Below, piece after piece: positions 14,283 to 60,624 of a DNA stretch of 64,000 nt. The notes below the pieces were generated by a model. It did not search any database. It was not told the origin of the DNA and was given only the letters and a program-made list of their open reading frames with translations. Source of the stretch: Hamiltosporidium tvaerminnensis FI-OER-3-3 (taxonomy: Eukaryota; Fungi; Microsporidia); NCBI GenBank assembly GCA_022605425.2, contig CM061246.1:1736001-1800000 (forward strand), in the 5' to 3' direction. Position numbers and translations under genes: made by a program. Positions within the stretch are counted from its first letter, which is position 1; every line of letters starts with the position of its first letter.

Positions 14283-14364
14283 TAGCCAGAGCGGGATTCG
14301 AACCCGCGCCCCCGAAGAGACTTGCACCTTAAACAAGCGCCTTAGACCACTCGGCCATCTGACT
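14283..14364 (-). tRNA. tRNA-Leu (anticodon AAG)
   Basis: Cloverleaf: acceptor AGTCAGA/TCTGGCT plus discriminator A; D-arm GCC-GAGTGGTCTAA-GGC; anticodon arm CTTGT-TTAAGGT-GCAAG; long variable arm; T-arm GCGGG-TTCGAAT-CCCGC. A T4 run lies just downstream. Confidence 0.96.
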
Positions 14365-55271: not shown

Positions 55272-55447
55272 TTATTAAAATAAATTTAATAATTTATCAG
55301 AATATATAAGACATAGAAATATTATAAGTTGTAGTTTATTCATTTATTAATAAATTTAATAATTTATCAGAATATATAAGACATAGAAATATTATAAGTT
55401 ATTAAAATAAATTTAATAATTTATCAGAATATATAAGACATAGAAAT
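55272..55447. repeat. three copies of a ~47-bp unit
   Basis: taaatttaataatttatcagaatatataagacatagaaat occurs three times with variable spacers. Confidence 0.85.
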
Positions 55448-55681
55448 CACATTAACTCTTGTTAATGTACAATTATAATATTTATTTATATAAACTTTTA
55501 AATTAAATGATGATTTATTTAAGAAAAAGAAATTTAATTTAATTAATAAAATAAAAAATAAATAAAAAAATTTATTTCTTACTGACTTATTACAATAATC
55601 GTTATTTGTTTGATTTATTTGATATTGTTTTTAAATTACATTTGATTATAATTTGTAGTTATTATAGATATTTTAGCTTTT

Positions 55682-58600
55682 TTAGAGTTTCTGATCAAAT
55701 AAAAATAATTCTTCTTCATCATATAATTCTAATTGAGAAAGAATAATGTCACTTGAATGTTCAAAATATCCATCGTTGTGTGAAATTATTAGTTTTGGTT
55801 TTTTTGTAGGTTGAATGTTTAATTCTTTGATTTTAGTTTTATCAGAATTTGGATGTAAATTTGAATTAATTTTTTTTGATTCAGATATCGGATTTAAATT
55901 ATCTTCCGTAATACTTTTTTCAGATTTAAATGTTTTTTCTGGTTTTTGATTGAGGAAAGGTTCGTTTCTAATAGGTATATGAAGTTCTATTGGTATATGA
56001 GGTTCTATAGATATATGTGTTTCTATTGGTATATGAGGTTCTATAGATATATGTGTTTCTATTGGTATATGAGGTTCTATAGATATATGTGTTTCTATTG
56101 GTATATGAGGTTCTATAGATATATGTGTTTCTATAGAATCAAAATTAGAAGCATTTTTAAATGATTCAATTCCTTCAAATGAATTACTTGAATTACACTG
56201 CCGAATAGATTTTGATGGAATATTTTCTTGAAACGCTGAAGAAGAATAATTGTCGTTCAATTCAGTCTGAATTAGGGACTTGGTTGTTAAAAAAACTGTT
56301 TGTTGTTCTTCTAAAAAAATATTTTTTGTGTATGGAAGACACAGAATAGTTTTTGGTGCTACAATAGTCTCAGTTTTATTTTTGTGATTTTCTAATTCAA
56401 TAATATTTTTCTTATAAAATTGAAATAATTGTAGTTCTCGTATAAAATAAAATTTTTCTTCTTTTAAACCATCAGATTCCCGTTTGAAAGAACAAATTTC
56501 CATTGAATTTTTGTCCTGATTTTGTAATTTAAAAGACCCAGAATAATCAGATTCTCGTTTGAAAGAACAAAATTCCATTGCATTTTTGTCCTGATTTTGT
56601 AAATTAAAAGACCCAGAATAATCAGATTCTCGTTTGAAAGAACAAATTTCCATTGAATTTTTGTCCTGATTTTGTAAATTAAAAGACCCAGAATAATCAG
56701 ATTCTCGTTTGAAAGAACAAAATTCCATTGCATTTTTGTCCTGAGTTTGTAAATTAAAAGACCCAGAATAATCAGATTCTCGTTTGAAAGAACAAATTTC
56801 CATTGAAATTTTTTCCTGATTTTGTAAATTGTTAAAAGATTCAGTATATTTAATTCCTTCCTCCGAGGTTATAATACTTGAATCCATCCTAGTTTCATTA
56901 ATTTCAATACCTTCTTCAACATTGGATTTTCTACTTTCAAAATATTTCCGAACAAAAAATTCCATTTGAAATAAAAAATTAAAAAAATCTAAAACTTCAC
57001 TTTCGTAATTATACGCCCATCCATTTAAATTTGGATAACTAAAAGTCTTAAAAATTTTTGATTTCAAAATTTTAATATCTGAAAGTTTATAAAATTCAAT
57101 ATAAATTGGTTTATGAATTTCATATTTAAAATTTTGTTGAAAAATATATTTTTCTAAAATTCTATGATTTGGATTGTGAAGTATTACTGATTTACCAGTA
57201 TTTGTACAAATATAAACCTTACAATTTATCTCATCAAAATTATCAGACCAACGGACTTTTTCATGTCTCTTGGCATCGTAATAATCCTCATCACAATTAA
57301 TCCTTGTTTTTCTTTGATTAAATTTTGATTTTGAAGACCGAAGAGATATACTTTCATGTGTTTTATTATAATTATTTCTAGAATAAAAACCAAAATTATC
57401 ATTTCTTTGTTTTTCCTCCGAGCAATAATATAATCGCGGAAAAATTTCAATGGTTTTTTCCGAACACCAATTCGTACAACGAATAATTTCATTATAATTT
57501 TTATTGCGAGATGTATTCCTTTTTCTATACTCACCTGTAAATCCTCTCTCAAGAATATTTTTATGTAAATTTTCTAAATTATTTTTTTCATATTTATCTT
57601 CTGATCTTATGCTTTTAATGTTATAATCATCTTCTTTTGAATCGAAATTAAACGGTTTTTTTCTTTTTAATTTTTTTAGACACAAATTAAAATCTTCGGA
57701 TTTTTTTTCAAACATAGAAATTTTTAAATCAGTTCGATGTTCTTTACGGATATTTTCATTTATTCCGAATTCTGTCTCTAAATTCCTTGGATTTATCTCT
57801 TTATTTGAATTTATTTTGAAATCTCTACAAATGGAATCTAAAGCAAGATCCTTTGTCTCTAGATTCCTTGGATTTCTCTCTTCATTCAAATTTCTTTTGA
57901 AATCTCTACAATTGGAATCTAGAGCAACATCCTTTGTCTCTAGATTCCTTGGATTTCTCTCTTTATTTGAATTTCTTTTGAAATCTCTACAATTGGAATC
58001 TAAAGCAAGATCCACTGTGTTTTCTAATCCTAAATTTTTACTTTCCTCTATTTTTTCCGAAACTGACTCAACTTTTCTTTCAATATTTTTGAAATGTAGA
58101 CATTTGATTTTTATTTTAATATTTCTTTTCAACCTCCATTTCTGTTTGAATATAGAATTCTTTGTATTAAGTTTTATTTGAAATTTATTTTCTTTTCTTT
58201 TCATAGAACTCATAAAAATATTTTTTTCAGTTGCTTGTCTAATAAAATATTTTTCAGAAGAAGATGTATTTATTGAACTTTGACTGTTTACAATCGTAAC
58301 AGAATTATTTTTATTATTCTTAGATTTTGTTTTATTTTTTTCTTCGAATCGATAAAAATTCGAATTTTTATCTTCTTCATCAATAAAAGTTGTTTCTAAT
58401 CCATCAACAATATCATTTTCAAATAAATTTTCTTCATATTTAATTAAATATTCTTCGAATTCTGGAATATTTTTTGTGTCTTTTTTATCTTCGATATTAC
58501 AAATACGATTAAAATATTTGCTTTTATAGTTTTCTATATTATCTGTAGATTTATTAAAATGTTTAATACATGTTTGCAATGGATAAGAATTTTGATGAAA

Positions 58601-59350
58601 AAGTAACCAAGAATTCGTTTGTTCATTTTCTGTAAATAAGTTTTCTGATTGCACTGAATCAACAATCAAATCGGTTGGACACGAAGAAGAAAAGGAATCG
58701 TGTACAGAATCAGAAGTATTGACTTCTTTTATTTCATTTAATCTGGAACTTATATTCTCTGTTAAAATATTTGTATTTTTTTCTTTTTCTGTTCCATCAT
58801 TATATAAAAAACAACCGATATTTTCATTTTCATTCAGGAAATTACAGTCAGAATAAAATTCAGAAAATACTTCTTTTAAATATTGCTGATTATGAGGAGT
58901 TATTTGTTTTTTTATTTCTTCCTTTGGAATGCATATATCTGAAATACTGAAAGGTTGAAATATTTTAAATTCTTTGGCAAATTTATAATCAAAATCATAA
59001 ATTAAATCCAATGGTTCACCAATTATAGGAGATTCAGATCCGCAATATCTAAATTCTTTAAGAAAAATATAAGGCTGAGACATATTAGAATCATAACAAT
59101 ATAAATAATCCTCTAAAGTTATAAAACATCCTTTTATTTCCGAATACGGCGTGGCAACTGTCTCTCGAAACCGTTCTAGAGATTCTTTCGATAATACCGC
59201 CAAAACAATATTTGTAGAATCTGAAAGTAATACCTTTAATGTATTGTTTTCGTTGTTTCCAAGTATTTGGATAATTTGCGCGCGCGCTGGATAATGTAAA
59301 GAAAATTGAAATCCATTTTTAATCCAAGGATTTCGTAGAAAATTGGACAT
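55682..59350 (-). CDS. 1222-aa protein with N-terminal TPP1/Est3/Tpz1-type OB fold and repeat-rich C-terminal region
   Basis: NPWI...AQIIQIL...VLLSDSTNIVLAVLSKESLERF...IKGCFITLEDY...IFLKEFRYCGSE...IGEP follows the TPP1/Est3 OB pattern (PWI...LSDG.H.I.A.FT.EA...F...G..I.L..Y...L.V..F...G...G.P). atccctc precedes ATG. Confidence 0.72.
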   Translation of the reverse strand: MSNFLRNPWIKNGFQFSLHYPARAQIIQILGNNENNTLKVLLSDSTNIVLAVLSKESLERFRETVATPYSEIKGCFITLEDYLYCYDSNMSQPYIFLKEFRYCGSESPIIGEPLDLIYDFDYKFAKEFKIFQPFSISDICIPKEEIKKQITPHNQQYLKEVFSEFYSDCNFLNENENIGCFLYNDGTEKEKNTNILTENISSRLNEIKEVNTSDSVHDSFSSSCPTDLIVDSVQSENLFTENEQTNSWLLFHQNSYPLQTCIKHFNKSTDNIENYKSKYFNRICNIEDKKDTKNIPEFEEYLIKYEENLFENDIVDGLETTFIDEEDKNSNFYRFEEKNKTKSKNNKNNSVTIVNSQSSINTSSSEKYFIRQATEKNIFMSSMKRKENKFQIKLNTKNSIFKQKWRLKRNIKIKIKCLHFKNIERKVESVSEKIEESKNLGLENTVDLALDSNCRDFKRNSNKERNPRNLETKDVALDSNCRDFKRNLNEERNPRNLETKDLALDSICRDFKINSNKEINPRNLETEFGINENIRKEHRTDLKISMFEKKSEDFNLCLKKLKRKKPFNFDSKEDDYNIKSIRSEDKYEKNNLENLHKNILERGFTGEYRKRNTSRNKNYNEIIRCTNWCSEKTIEIFPRLYYCSEEKQRNDNFGFYSRNNYNKTHESISLRSSKSKFNQRKTRINCDEDYYDAKRHEKVRWSDNFDEINCKVYICTNTGKSVILHNPNHRILEKYIFQQNFKYEIHKPIYIEFYKLSDIKILKSKIFKTFSYPNLNGWAYNYESEVLDFFNFLFQMEFFVRKYFESRKSNVEEGIEINETRMDSSIITSEEGIKYTESFNNLQNQEKISMEICSFKRESDYSGSFNLQTQDKNAMEFCSFKRESDYSGSFNLQNQDKNSMEICSFKRESDYSGSFNLQNQDKNAMEFCSFKRESDYSGSFKLQNQDKNSMEICSFKRESDGLKEEKFYFIRELQLFQFYKKNIIELENHKNKTETIVAPKTILCLPYTKNIFLEEQQTVFLTTKSLIQTELNDNYSSSAFQENIPSKSIRQCNSSNSFEGIESFKNASNFDSIETHISIEPHIPIETHISIEPHIPIETHISIEPHIPIETHISIEPHIPIELHIPIRNEPFLNQKPEKTFKSEKSITEDNLNPISESKKINSNLHPNSDKTKIKELNIQPTKKPKLIISHNDGYFEHSSDIILSQLELYDEEELFLFDQKL
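55968..56135 (-). repeat. coding 36-bp (12-aa IETHISIEPHIP) tandem repeat, ~4.5 copies
   Basis: Near-perfect copies are visible in DNA and protein. Confidence 0.95.
56471..56830 (-). repeat. coding 75-bp (25-aa) tandem repeat, ~4.8 copies
   Basis: FKRESDYSGSFNLQNQDKN(A/S)ME(F/I)CS; attctcgtttgaaag recurs at 56551, 56626, 56701 and 56776. Confidence 0.95.
57772..58012 (-). repeat. coding 81-bp (27-aa) tandem repeat, 3 copies
   Basis: DLALDSNCRDFKRNSNKERNPRNLETK three times. Confidence 0.95.
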
Positions 59351-60624
59351 GAGGGATATCTAAAAATTATTTTTTTTGTTACTTTTTCATTAAAATTTCA
59401 GTCTTTTAATTCTTGTAAATTTTTAAGAAATTGTAAATATAAAGTTTTTTTAAATACTTTTATTGTTGTTATTATTAATGAATACTGCTTGATTTTATAA
59501 AACCGTTGTTTCTCTTTATTTATAAGAAATATTTTTTTATCTGTCTTAAATTTGTTTATAATCCAATAAATTGTAAAAGAAATATTTATATTTCTTTGCT
59601 TTTTTACATTTCACATTCATTGCTTTTCTTCCTGTAATATCAAAAAAAAATAGAAAATATTATTTTTTTTTAACTCTTCTTTGATCTTTTACTGAACAGT
59701 AACAATTTACAAATCAAAATAAAGTGCTTCGTTTTAATTCTATCTGATAATAATTCATTACATTCTATTCCATATCGTAATATAATCATAAAAAGTAAAT
59801 GTTAAGATATTTCGAAGTTAAAACAGTTTTTATCTAAATAGAACCAAATCATAAATTAAAATCTCACAATTTAATGAAATAACGTTTATAAATAATTAGA
59901 TAAAGAATTATTACCAAAATAGATCTAAAAAAAAGTTAATTCATATCCCTTTCTTTTAATTCTATCTTAATATAATAAAACTATAAAACCAAATTTAAGT
60001 CTAAAAAATACGTTTTTGAATTTATTTTTTTGACTATAATTGTTTTTTGATAAAGATGGAATTTAAATTGATATCTCACAAATATATTTATAACCTTTAT
60101 ATCTAATTGATCTGATTTAATTAAATATTAAATCTCAATCTTTATTGTTAAATTTTATGTTTTTTAAAAAACCCATAATTAAGTACAACTTTATAGATGT
60201 CTTTAATTCACCTACGTAGTGTTTTAATAAGAACCTAAACTCAATTTTATGAGCATTATCACTTCTAAGCATTCAAATTTATTAAAATATTATGGTATTT
60301 TAAAAGACTATTTCTACAAGTAATTTCATTCTCAATAACATATCTAATCATATATGTTTTTTAATTATTTTAATATAAATGATCTATGTTTTTTAAAAGT
60401 ATTTTAAATTAAATAAGTGCCTATCTAAGTTTAAATTTTAGAGGAATACTTTTAACCGGTATAATTTGATTTTATATTCTATATTTAGTTTAATTTCTGA
60501 TATTCCATTTATAGATTATATTTTCTTTATCTATTATTTAACTGAGTAAAAATAAAATTCGTTATTTTAAAATCCATAGACTTAATTAGGCTCAAAAATA
60601 ATTAGATATACAACTCTCACTCAT

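What the first reader, a model, noticed from the sequence alone, without database searches (positions are those of the whole stretch)
59000..59350. Candidate microsporidian TPP1/Est3/Tpz1 telomerase-recruitment factor
Seen: the first ~116 aa carry PWI, LLSDS...LAVLSKESLERF, KGCFITLEDY and F.Y.G.E...IGEP. Known: this motif series characterises the TPP1/Est3 OB fold that recruits telomerase; TPP1 and Tpz1 also bridge Pot1 to shelterin. Inference: this is a highly diverged shelterin-like subunit in a reduced parasite whose telomere proteins are, to my knowledge, poorly described. It is over twice the length of human TPP1, with an unknown ~1100-aa extension.
Basis: partly seen in the sequence, partly recalled or inferred. 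Interest (0 to 1): 0.8.

Follow-up and report, generated by a model that had tools for sequence, protein, structure and literature searches.

The report
Hamiltosporidium TPP1/Tpz1 telomere protein, repeat-swollen
This gene of the Daphnia parasite Hamiltosporidium encodes the microsporidian version of the telomere protein TPP1/Tpz1, a kind already reported in Encephalitozoon; here it is unannotated and about four times longer because of in-frame repeats.

Summary
Window 55682-59350 (-) is one 1222-aa ORF, and its first ~116 residues carry the quoted motifs.

- The N-terminus passes Pfam's curated TPP1/ACD threshold (34.1 bits, cut-off 26.5).
- A confident AlphaFold model (pLDDT 82.5) is an OB fold. 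Its seven best Foldseek matches are human TPP1.
- A second aligner ties TPP1 (Z 14.1) with RPA70N (Z 14.6). Sequence settles this: all 15 family members hit TPP1 and none hits Rep-A_N.
- The genome has its own RPA70, a TERT and a POT1.

The implied novelty is not supported. The genome is Hamiltosporidium tvaerminnensis. The protein is the single-copy counterpart of an Encephalitozoon family that very probably is the protein a 2023 paper lists as Tpz1 beside Pot1 (PMC10158259). UniRef already labels some relatives "TPP1/Est3 domain-containing".

New here:
- The Hamiltosporidium annotation; the near-identical H. magnivora protein is filed as "hypothetical".
- A ~1,060-aa single-copy, fast-evolving, repeat-rich insert.
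- A short conserved C-terminal motif (KLIISHNDGYFE here) plus an acidic tail, shared across the family. It is a candidate partner-binding peptide.

Telomerase recruitment and Pot1 binding are inferred, not shown. The scan's own notes hold no earlier TPP1/Tpz1 finding.

The parts
55682..59350 (-). Complete ORF of 1222 aa plus stop: the Hamiltosporidium TPP1/Tpz1-family protein.
   Evidence: It is 96% identical over 865 aa to the partial H. magnivora protein CWI36_0108p0040. It is the only place in the genome hit by the E. cuniculi relative P0017.
58976..59350 (-). N-terminal OB-fold domain, aa 1-125: an N-terminal helix carrying PWI, then strand-strand-strand-helix-strand-strand.
   Evidence: Pfam PF10341 TPP1, 34.1 bits against a cut-off of 26.5, aa 17-113. 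AlphaFold2 with a 15-sequence alignment gives pLDDT 82.5. The Foldseek top matches are human TPP1 OB, E 1e-7.
59353..59355 (-). CCC just upstream of the start codon (gatatCCCtcATG).
   Evidence: Read directly. That CCC marks microsporidian starts rests on general knowledge and on scan note s1-618692. The start is independently confirmed by the invariant M1 and the shared MSxFLxxPWI N-terminus.
57773..58013 (-). Tandem array of 81 bp x 3.0 (27-aa unit, aa ~446-526).
   Evidence: Tandem Repeats Finder, 91% matches. The unit differs between H. tvaerminnensis and H. magnivora.
56471..56830 (-). Tandem array of 75 bp x 4.8 (25-aa unit, aa ~841-960).
   Evidence: Tandem Repeats Finder, 95% matches. 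An in-frame 3-bp deletion at its edge (56828) appears in two of four public runs.
55966..56136 (-). Tandem array of 18/36 bp x 9.4/4.7 (HIPIE/HISIE units, aa ~1072-1128).
   Evidence: Tandem Repeats Finder, 96% matches at period 36.
55760..55795 (-). C-terminal short motif KLIISHNDGYFE (aa 1186-1197), a candidate partner-binding peptide.
   Evidence: It resembles RIYISEDMYIE, KIYIFDGVYVE, RIFIDDDLYIE and KIFIDDDLYVM, which sit in the same relative position in Encephalitozoon, Astathelohania and other relatives. The match needs a one-residue insertion and the pattern was written after seeing it, so it is a lead, not a test.
55685..55759 (-). Hydrophobic-then-acidic C-terminal tail (…IILSQLELYDEEELFLFDQKL).
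   Evidence: Comparable to the LDLCSDSEEE-type end of the Encephalitozoon and Ordospora relatives. This is a resemblance only.

Best explanation
The gene encodes the Hamiltosporidium tvaerminnensis member of the TPP1/Tpz1 (ACD) family. This is the OB-fold subunit that, in animals and fission yeast, pairs with the single-strand telomere binder POT1 and uses the surface of its OB domain to bring telomerase to the chromosome end.

Shown here:
- The first ~125 residues belong to the Pfam TPP1 family and fold as a TPP1-like OB domain.
- The gene is single-copy.
- It is the counterpart of a family present in Encephalitozoon, Ordospora, Astathelohania and unnamed microsporidian assemblies.
- The same genome encodes TERT, POT1 and a separate RPA70.

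Inferred:
- The OB domain contacts TERT, whose N-terminus keeps a TEN-like stretch.
- The conserved C-terminal peptide (KLIISHNDGYFE plus an acidic tail) holds a partner, most likely Pot1.
- The system is a minimal Pot1-Tpz1 pair without a TIN2/Poz1-type bridge.

The ~1,060 residues between the OB domain and the C-terminal peptide carry three in-frame tandem arrays, have no detectable domain and evolve quickly. I read them as a tolerated or spacer-like linker grown by repeat expansion, not as an added catalytic or binding module.
For: - Pfam TPP1 at 34.1 bits, over the 26.5 cut-off. All 15 family members hit PF10341, best E 1.8e-19; two also touch TEBP_beta; none hits Rep-A_N.
- The family profile finds only Est3 among Protein Data Bank sequences, E 0.09.
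- The AlphaFold2 model has pLDDT 82.5 and OB topology.
- Foldseek ranks human TPP1 chains 1-7 (E 1e-7 to 7e-7, 18-21% identity), then RPA70N, Est3, TEBP-beta and Tetrahymena p50.
- The E. cuniculi relative P0017 hits only this locus in the genome, E 3.9e-15.
- Named relatives include Eint_111300, EROM_111300 and E. cuniculi and Ordospora proteins, several called 'Shelterin complex subunit TPP1/Est3 domain-containing protein' by UniRef.
- Tpz1 and Pot1 are reported for Encephalitozoon in PMC10158259.
- TERT has RBD and RT domains. A co-linear weak match places its aa 97-144 on human TERT 119-167.
- POT1 OB1 and POT1PC lie on contig 15.
- The frame is kept in four public runs: 39 substitutions with no stop, and the only indel inside the ORF is 3 bp.
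Against: - VIA-align puts yeast Rfa1 N-OB (Z 14.6) level with TPP1 (Z 14.1 and 13.2), so fold alone does not separate the two OB classes.
- No direct sequence match to a solved TPP1 chain was obtained. phmmer found nothing and the profile found only Est3 weakly.
- No experiment, co-fold or RNA evidence was available. No listed run that holds the stretch is on record as RNA.
- TEL-patch residues could not be mapped, because no residue-level structural alignment was on hand.
- POT1 in this assembly is split into two ORFs by an apparent one-base shift.
- The C-terminal motif match was defined after the fact.
- The substitution ratio of 29 non-synonymous to 10 synonymous shows weak constraint on most of the protein.
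Confidence: 0.8

Rival explanations
1. It works like budding-yeast Est3: an OB-fold subunit of the telomerase holoenzyme that activates the enzyme and does not pair with Pot1.
For: The only Protein Data Bank sequences matched by the family profile are Est3, E 0.09. Est3 structures match the model at Z 11.8 and 11.0. Microsporidia are fungal relatives.
Against: - Est3 proteins are stand-alone OB domains of about 180 aa. Every microsporidian relative has a tail of 90-1,100 aa with conserved motifs.
- A POT1 gene is present.
- Human TPP1 matches better than Est3 in both structure searches.
- No Cdc13-type system was looked for.
Confidence: 0.12
2. It is an RPA70N-type protein-interaction OB domain on a scaffold unrelated to telomeres, for example a checkpoint or repair adaptor.
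For: Rfa1 N-OB is nominally the top VIA-align match, Z 14.6. RPA70N chains follow TPP1 closely in Foldseek, E about 1e-6. The genome's true RPA70N itself touches the TPP1 model weakly, 18.1 bits, which shows the two families are neighbours.
Against: - No Rep-A_N hit at E up to 1 in any of 15 members.
- hhalign against this genome's RPA70N gives 0.65% probability.
- Identity to TPP1 chains is 18-22%, against 11-18% for RPA70N.
- The genome has a complete RPA70 of its own, with Rep-A_N and all DNA-binding domains.
Confidence: 0.05
3. The 1222-aa ORF is not one functional protein. Only a short OB protein is made, and the rest is a degenerating or mis-joined tail.
For: The extension has no domain hit, no relatives and a near-neutral substitution pattern. 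No RNA evidence was obtained.
Against: - A 3.7-kb open frame in 25% G+C DNA needs selection to stay open.
- It is open for at least 865 aa in H. magnivora as well.
- There are no stops or frame-breaking indels in four runs.
- The family's C-terminal motif and acidic tail sit at the very end of the long ORF.
Confidence: 0.03

Closest known systems
Encephalitozoon 'Pot1 and Tin2-interacting protein (Tpz1)' of Mascarenhas dos Santos et al. 2023 (PMC10158259); relatives Eint_111300, EROM_111300 and the E. cuniculi GB-M1 protein P0017
   Same: - Same Pfam family PF10341.
- About 26-32% identity over the OB domain.
- Same invariant residues: W9, I10, S43, D44, G74, F100, Y102, G104, E106, G111, P113.
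- Same type of C-terminal motif and acidic end.
- P0017 hits only this locus in the genome; I did not run the reverse search.
   Different: - The Encephalitozoon proteins are 242-315 aa; this one is 1222 aa, with ~1,060 aa and three tandem arrays inserted between the OB domain and the C-terminal motif.
- The motif here carries an extra residue.
- That the paper's locus tags are these same proteins is my inference, from chromosome 11 in E. intestinalis and from these proteins being the TPP1-family hits. I did not check it in the paper's supplement.
Human TPP1 (ACD) OB domain, PDB 2I46, 5I2X, 7QXA/7QXB, 7TRE
   Same: Best Foldseek matches (E 1e-7, TM by target 0.65-0.73, about 20% identity). VIA-align Z 14.1 and 13.2 over 119-130 residues. 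Pfam family membership.
   Different: No detectable similarity after the OB domain. No TIN2 in the genome by Pfam. TEL-patch residues were not mapped. The length is more than double.
S. pombe Tpz1
   Same: A fungal-lineage TPP1 homologue: an N-terminal OB domain followed by short partner-binding peptides in a poorly ordered tail. The architecture is compared from general knowledge.
   Different: Homologues of its partners Poz1 and Ccq1 were not searched for.
S. cerevisiae / H. polymorpha Est3 (PDB 2M9V, 9SWN, 6Q44)
   Same: The only PDB sequences reached by the family profile; the SDS.H...F stretch aligns. Z 11.8 and 11.0.
   Different: Est3 is a stand-alone OB domain without a tail. It works without Pot1.
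RPA70 N-terminal OB (Rep-A_N)
   Same: Same OB sub-class by structure, Z 14.6 and 12.5.
   Different: No sequence-family match. It is not followed by DNA-binding domains A-C. The genome has a separate true RPA70.

Membership tests
TPP1/ACD (Pfam PF10341) | Sequence score above the family's curated gathering threshold | tested here: met
   34.1 bits against 26.5 for aa 1-150. All 15 aligned relatives match at E <= 1, best 1.8e-19. Scanned at full length, 8 of 10 relatives passed the cut-off, and E. cuniculi P0017 scored 29.5 bits. The full-length 1222-aa query gives no hit, so the domain must be searched alone.
TPP1/ACD (Pfam PF10341) | OB fold with an N-terminal helix, closest to solved TPP1 OB domains | tested here: inconclusive
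   The fold is met: pLDDT 82.5 with strand-strand-strand-helix-strand-strand topology. Foldseek ranks TPP1 first. VIA-align ties TPP1 (Z 14.1) with Rfa1 N-OB (Z 14.6).
TPP1/ACD (Pfam PF10341) | A POT1 partner encoded in the same genome | tested here: met
   PF02765 at 38.3 bits and PF16686 at 29.7 bits on adjacent same-strand ORFs of contig 15. The two ORFs are separated by an apparent one-base frame shift.
TPP1/ACD (Pfam PF10341) | A POT1-binding segment downstream of the OB domain | not testable with these tools
   A conserved C-terminal peptide exists, but there was no multimer prediction or binding assay. Its partner is unknown.
TPP1/ACD (Pfam PF10341) | A telomerase-recruiting surface (TEL patch) contacting TERT TEN/IFD | not testable with these tools
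   TERT is present with RBD and RT domains and a weak TEN-like stretch. Surface residues could not be mapped without a residue-level structural alignment.
TPP1/ACD (Pfam PF10341) | A C-terminal link to a TIN2/Poz1-type bridge to duplex-binding shelterin | tested here: inconclusive
   No TINF2_N, TRF or Rap1_C match in the genome. The tool warns that this does not show absence, and Poz1 was not searched.
Est3 | A stand-alone OB protein of about 180 aa that is a telomerase subunit | tested here: not met
   The protein is 1222 aa and its relatives 242-1131 aa, apart from one 167-aa outlier, with conserved tail motifs. The sequence match to Est3 is only E 0.09.
RPA70 N-terminal domain (Pfam PF04057 Rep-A_N) | A Rep-A_N sequence match, followed by DNA-binding OB domains A, B and C | tested here: not met
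   No Rep-A_N hit in any of 15 members. hhalign gives 0.65% against the genome's own RPA70N. No further OB domains were found in the extension.

The most novel reading that the evidence does not exclude
Microsporidia run a stripped-down two-protein end cap (Pot1 plus this Tpz1-like protein). The short conserved peptide [KR]-I-[YF]-I-x-[DE]-[DG]-x-Y-[IV]-E with its acidic tail is the whole of the Pot1-binding (or other partner-binding) interface. Hamiltosporidium shows that this interface still works when it is moved more than 1,000 residues from the OB domain by repeat expansion. The family profile built here would then also find the 'missing' shelterin subunit in lineages reported to lack it, such as Microsporidia sp. 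MB.
Probability: 0.3. Interest if true: 0.45.

Novelty: new member of a known kind. Interest (0 to 1): 0.3.

Why it matters
It gives a name to a Hamiltosporidium gene whose near-identical H. magnivora counterpart is filed as "hypothetical". With TERT and POT1, it completes a core telomere toolkit for a large-genome microsporidian with canonical TTAGGG ends.

The 15-sequence family alignment shows that the TPP1-type subunit is widespread in the phylum. It offers a more sensitive probe for lineages where homology searches reported no shelterin, such as Microsporidia sp. MB (PMC13174016).

The contrast between relatives of about 250 aa in Encephalitozoon and 1222 aa here is a clean natural experiment on how much disordered, repeat-derived sequence a telomere adaptor tolerates between its two functional ends. 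None of this overturns current understanding.

Tried and rejected
- Pfam on the full 1222-aa protein found nothing; the domain only scores when cut out.
- phmmer of the domain against Protein Data Bank sequences found nothing.
- A single-sequence AlphaFold2 run gave pLDDT 39 and was unusable. It was replaced by the alignment-based model.
- The word-index search restricted to proteins of similar length found only the H. magnivora orthologue. I therefore used the exhaustive search, because the question of relatives was open.
- The extension gave nothing: no Pfam hit on three pieces apart from a meaningless FH1 hit at E 0.22; no usable hit for aa 600-840 in the ESM Atlas; no BLASTP similarity to the tails of relatives; no second copy in the genome.
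- No run on record as RNA holds the stretch, so expression was not tested.
- Pfam TRF, TINF2_N, Rap1_C and Stn1 found nothing in the genome. This is not evidence of absence; the Encephalitozoon paper lists no sequence E-value for Stn1 or Ten1, only a structure score.
- A second weak PF10341 match at contig 15:777693-777809 (15.9 bits, 85-aa frame) is below the cut-off and was dismissed without follow-up.
- The second POT1-model match, on contig 12, is RPA70.

Full report
**What is there.** The window has about 25% G+C. On the minus strand, 55682-59350 is one uninterrupted ORF of 1222 codons. The ATG at 59350 is preceded by gatatCCCtc, and only three in-frame codons lie between it and the next upstream stop (open frame 1225 aa).

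**Which organism.** The N-terminus is 99% identical to a partial "hypothetical protein" of Hamiltosporidium magnivora, and 96% identical over 865 aa. The assembly has 21,638,905 bases in 17 contigs. This matches the published H. tvaerminnensis FI-OER-3-3 genome: 21.64 Mb, 17 contigs, (TTAGGG)n telomeres (PMC10542269; accession named in PMC13174016).

**Family membership by sequence.**
- Residues 1-150 hit Pfam PF10341 (TPP1/ACD) at 34.1 bits, over the curated 26.5-bit cut-off, and hit nothing else at E up to 10. The full-length protein gives no hit at all, which probably explains why the gene stayed unnamed.
- The word-index search saw only the sister species. I therefore ran the exhaustive HMMER search. 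It returned 14 relatives, E 9e-16 to 1e-4, lengths 167-1131 aa, always matching from their residue 1 to about 150.
- Named relatives are Astathelohania contejeani TCON_1922, which UniRef titles [quoted passage not shown], and Ordospora pajunii HK407_12g18040.
- A profile of the short relatives then retrieved proteins of Encephalitozoon intestinalis (Eint_111300), E. cuniculi GB-M1, E. hellem, E. romaleae (EROM_111300) and Ordospora colligata.
- All 15 members hit PF10341 (best E 1.8e-19). Two also touch TEBP_beta. None touches Rep-A_N.
- The A1 profile finds only Est3 among Protein Data Bank sequences, weakly at E 0.09, through the SDS.H...F stretch.
- The E. cuniculi protein hits this locus and no other in the genome (E 3.9e-15). 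The gene is therefore single-copy and the counterpart of the Encephalitozoon family.

**Fold.** Folded alone, the domain gave pLDDT 39. With A1 the model reaches pLDDT 82.5 and pTM 0.71. It has an N-terminal helix, then strand-strand-strand-helix-strand-strand: an OB fold.
- Foldseek against the Protein Data Bank ranks human TPP1 OB chains 1-7 (E 1.1e-7 to 7.2e-7, 18-21% identity). RPA70N follows (about 1e-6, 11-18% identity), then Est3, Oxytricha TEBP-beta and Tetrahymena p50.
- The Foldseek-independent VIA-align search puts yeast Rfa1 N-OB at Z 14.6, TPP1 at 14.1 and 13.2, RPA70N at 12.5, Est3 at 11.8 and 11.0, and TEBP-beta at 10.1.

Sequence decides it:
- No Rep-A_N signal appears in any member.
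- hhalign of A1 against this genome's own RPA70N gives 0.65% probability.
- The genome carries a complete RPA70 with Rep-A_N (44.3 bits) and all DNA-binding domains. Its N-OB touches the TPP1 model only at 18.1 bits, below the cut-off.

**Partners in the genome.**
- TERT: an 843-aa ORF on contig 4 with Telomerase_RBD (66.6 bits) and RVT_1 (65.6 bits). It matches human TERT at E 1e-32. A weak co-linear extra stretch places aa 97-144 on human residues 119-167. To my knowledge those residues lie in the TEN domain. This is a hint that the surface TPP1 binds in humans is retained.
- POT1: two adjacent same-strand ORFs on contig 15 carry POT1 OB1 (38.3 bits) and POT1PC (29.7 bits). The reading frame switches by one base in an A-rich run between them. 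This looks like a long-read indel but could be real.
- Pfam models for TRF, TINF2_N, Rap1_C and Stn1 found nothing. The tool warns that this does not show absence.

**The rest of the protein.** Beyond residue about 125 there is no Pfam hit, no usable Atlas neighbour for aa 600-840, no BLASTP similarity to the tails of relatives and no other copy in the genome.
- Three tandem arrays lie in frame: 81 bp x 3 (aa 446-526), 75 bp x 4.8 (aa 841-960) and 18/36 bp x 9.4/4.7 (aa 1072-1128).
- The composition is rich in E, N, K and S.
- In four public runs of one study, laid as contigs on 3,901 letters, the ORF shows 39 substitutions: 10 synonymous, 29 non-synonymous, no stop. The only indel inside the ORF is 3 bp. 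A 1-bp deletion lies downstream of the stop codon.
- Only one of the 39 substitutions falls in the core OB domain (aa 90).
- The frame is therefore maintained, but most of the extension is only weakly constrained.

**A conserved C-terminal peptide.** Near the C-terminus of many relatives there is a short motif: RIYISEDMYIE, RVYISEDMYIE, KIYLSDGVYVE, RIYIFDGMYVE (E. cuniculi), KIYIFDGVYVE, RIFIDDDLYIE (Astathelohania), KIFIDDDLYVM and KILIGDNLFYL. In the Encephalitozoon/Ordospora clade an ending like LDLCSDSEEE follows it.
- The Hamiltosporidium protein has KLIISHNDGYFE at aa 1186-1197, followed by IILSQLELYDEEELFLFDQKL.
- A loose pattern covering it occurs in 11 of 20,000 shuffles of the protein, and in none within the last 60 residues. 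I wrote that pattern after seeing the match, so I treat it as a lead.
- If it holds, the architecture is OB domain, variable linker (about 80 to about 1,060 aa), partner peptide, acidic tail. That resembles TPP1/Tpz1, not stand-alone Est3.

**What is already known.** Mascarenhas dos Santos et al. 2023 list TERT, Stn1, Ten1, Pot1 and "Pot1 and Tin2-interacting protein (Tpz1)" for E. intestinalis, E. hellem and E. cuniculi, with a TM score of 0.71 and E 5.9e-07 for Tpz1 (PMC10158259). The E. intestinalis tag is on chromosome 11, as is Eint_111300. I infer that these are the same family but did not verify the tags. A 2026 paper reports that Microsporidia sp. MB lacks shelterin and CST components by homology search (PMC13174016). 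The profile built here could re-test that. My paper searches for TPP1, Est3 or shelterin together with microsporidia or Encephalitozoon turned up no other description of a microsporidian TPP1. The scan's own notes hold no earlier TPP1/Tpz1 finding.

**Verdict.** The gene is a new, unannotated and unusually long member of a family already recognised in the phylum. The mechanism is inferred from family membership and genomic context, not shown: the OB surface recruits or activates telomerase, and the tail peptide holds Pot1. My confidence is about 0.9 for family membership and lower for the mechanism, which gives 0.8 overall.

Noticed in passing
L003:1342-1500 (G000 contig 15, about 969,100-969,300): The POT1 gene is split into a 160-aa ORF (POT1 OB1) and a 280-aa ORF (POT1PC). 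The reading frame shifts by one base inside an A-rich run (…aaaataaaaatattaaatt…). This is either a long-read indel error or a real frameshift in the telomere end-binding protein.
   Followed up: partly
window 52001-56000: Directly downstream of the gene lies a stretch with extreme composition: G+C 14.5%, then 6.5%, with strong AT and GC skew. Another note of the scan reads it as homopolymer junk that hides a retrotransposon.
   Followed up: no
L004:892-2814 (G000 contig 12): The genuine RPA70 has a ~120-aa low-complexity insert rich in N, S, P and T between its N-OB and DNA-binding domain A. Its N-OB scores 18.1 bits on the TPP1 Pfam model, which shows how close the two OB families are.
   Followed up: partly
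G000 contig 15:777693-777809 (L002): A weak second match to the TPP1 model (15.9 bits, E 0.11) in an 85-aa open frame. It is below the cut-off and probably spurious.
   Followed up: no
P0003, P0005, P0006, P0012, P0013 (relatives from unnamed assemblies): One clade of the family shares a second C-terminal motif, G-[VI]-I-x-[FLV]-x(4-8)-NFD[LM]SIF-[ST]-[KR]-K-[KR], which looks like a nuclear-localisation-type basic end. It is absent from the Hamiltosporidium and Encephalitozoon proteins.
   Followed up: no
window 56773-56850 and 57889-58016: Public-run contigs break or diverge at the edges of the 75-bp and 81-bp arrays. There are clustered substitutions, one 3-bp deletion at 56828 and a 37-base back-step at 58016/57980. 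This suggests repeat-unit or copy-number differences between isolates.
   Followed up: partly
window 14283-14364 (-): The only Rfam match in the window at gathering score is a tRNA gene (53.8 bits).
   Followed up: no
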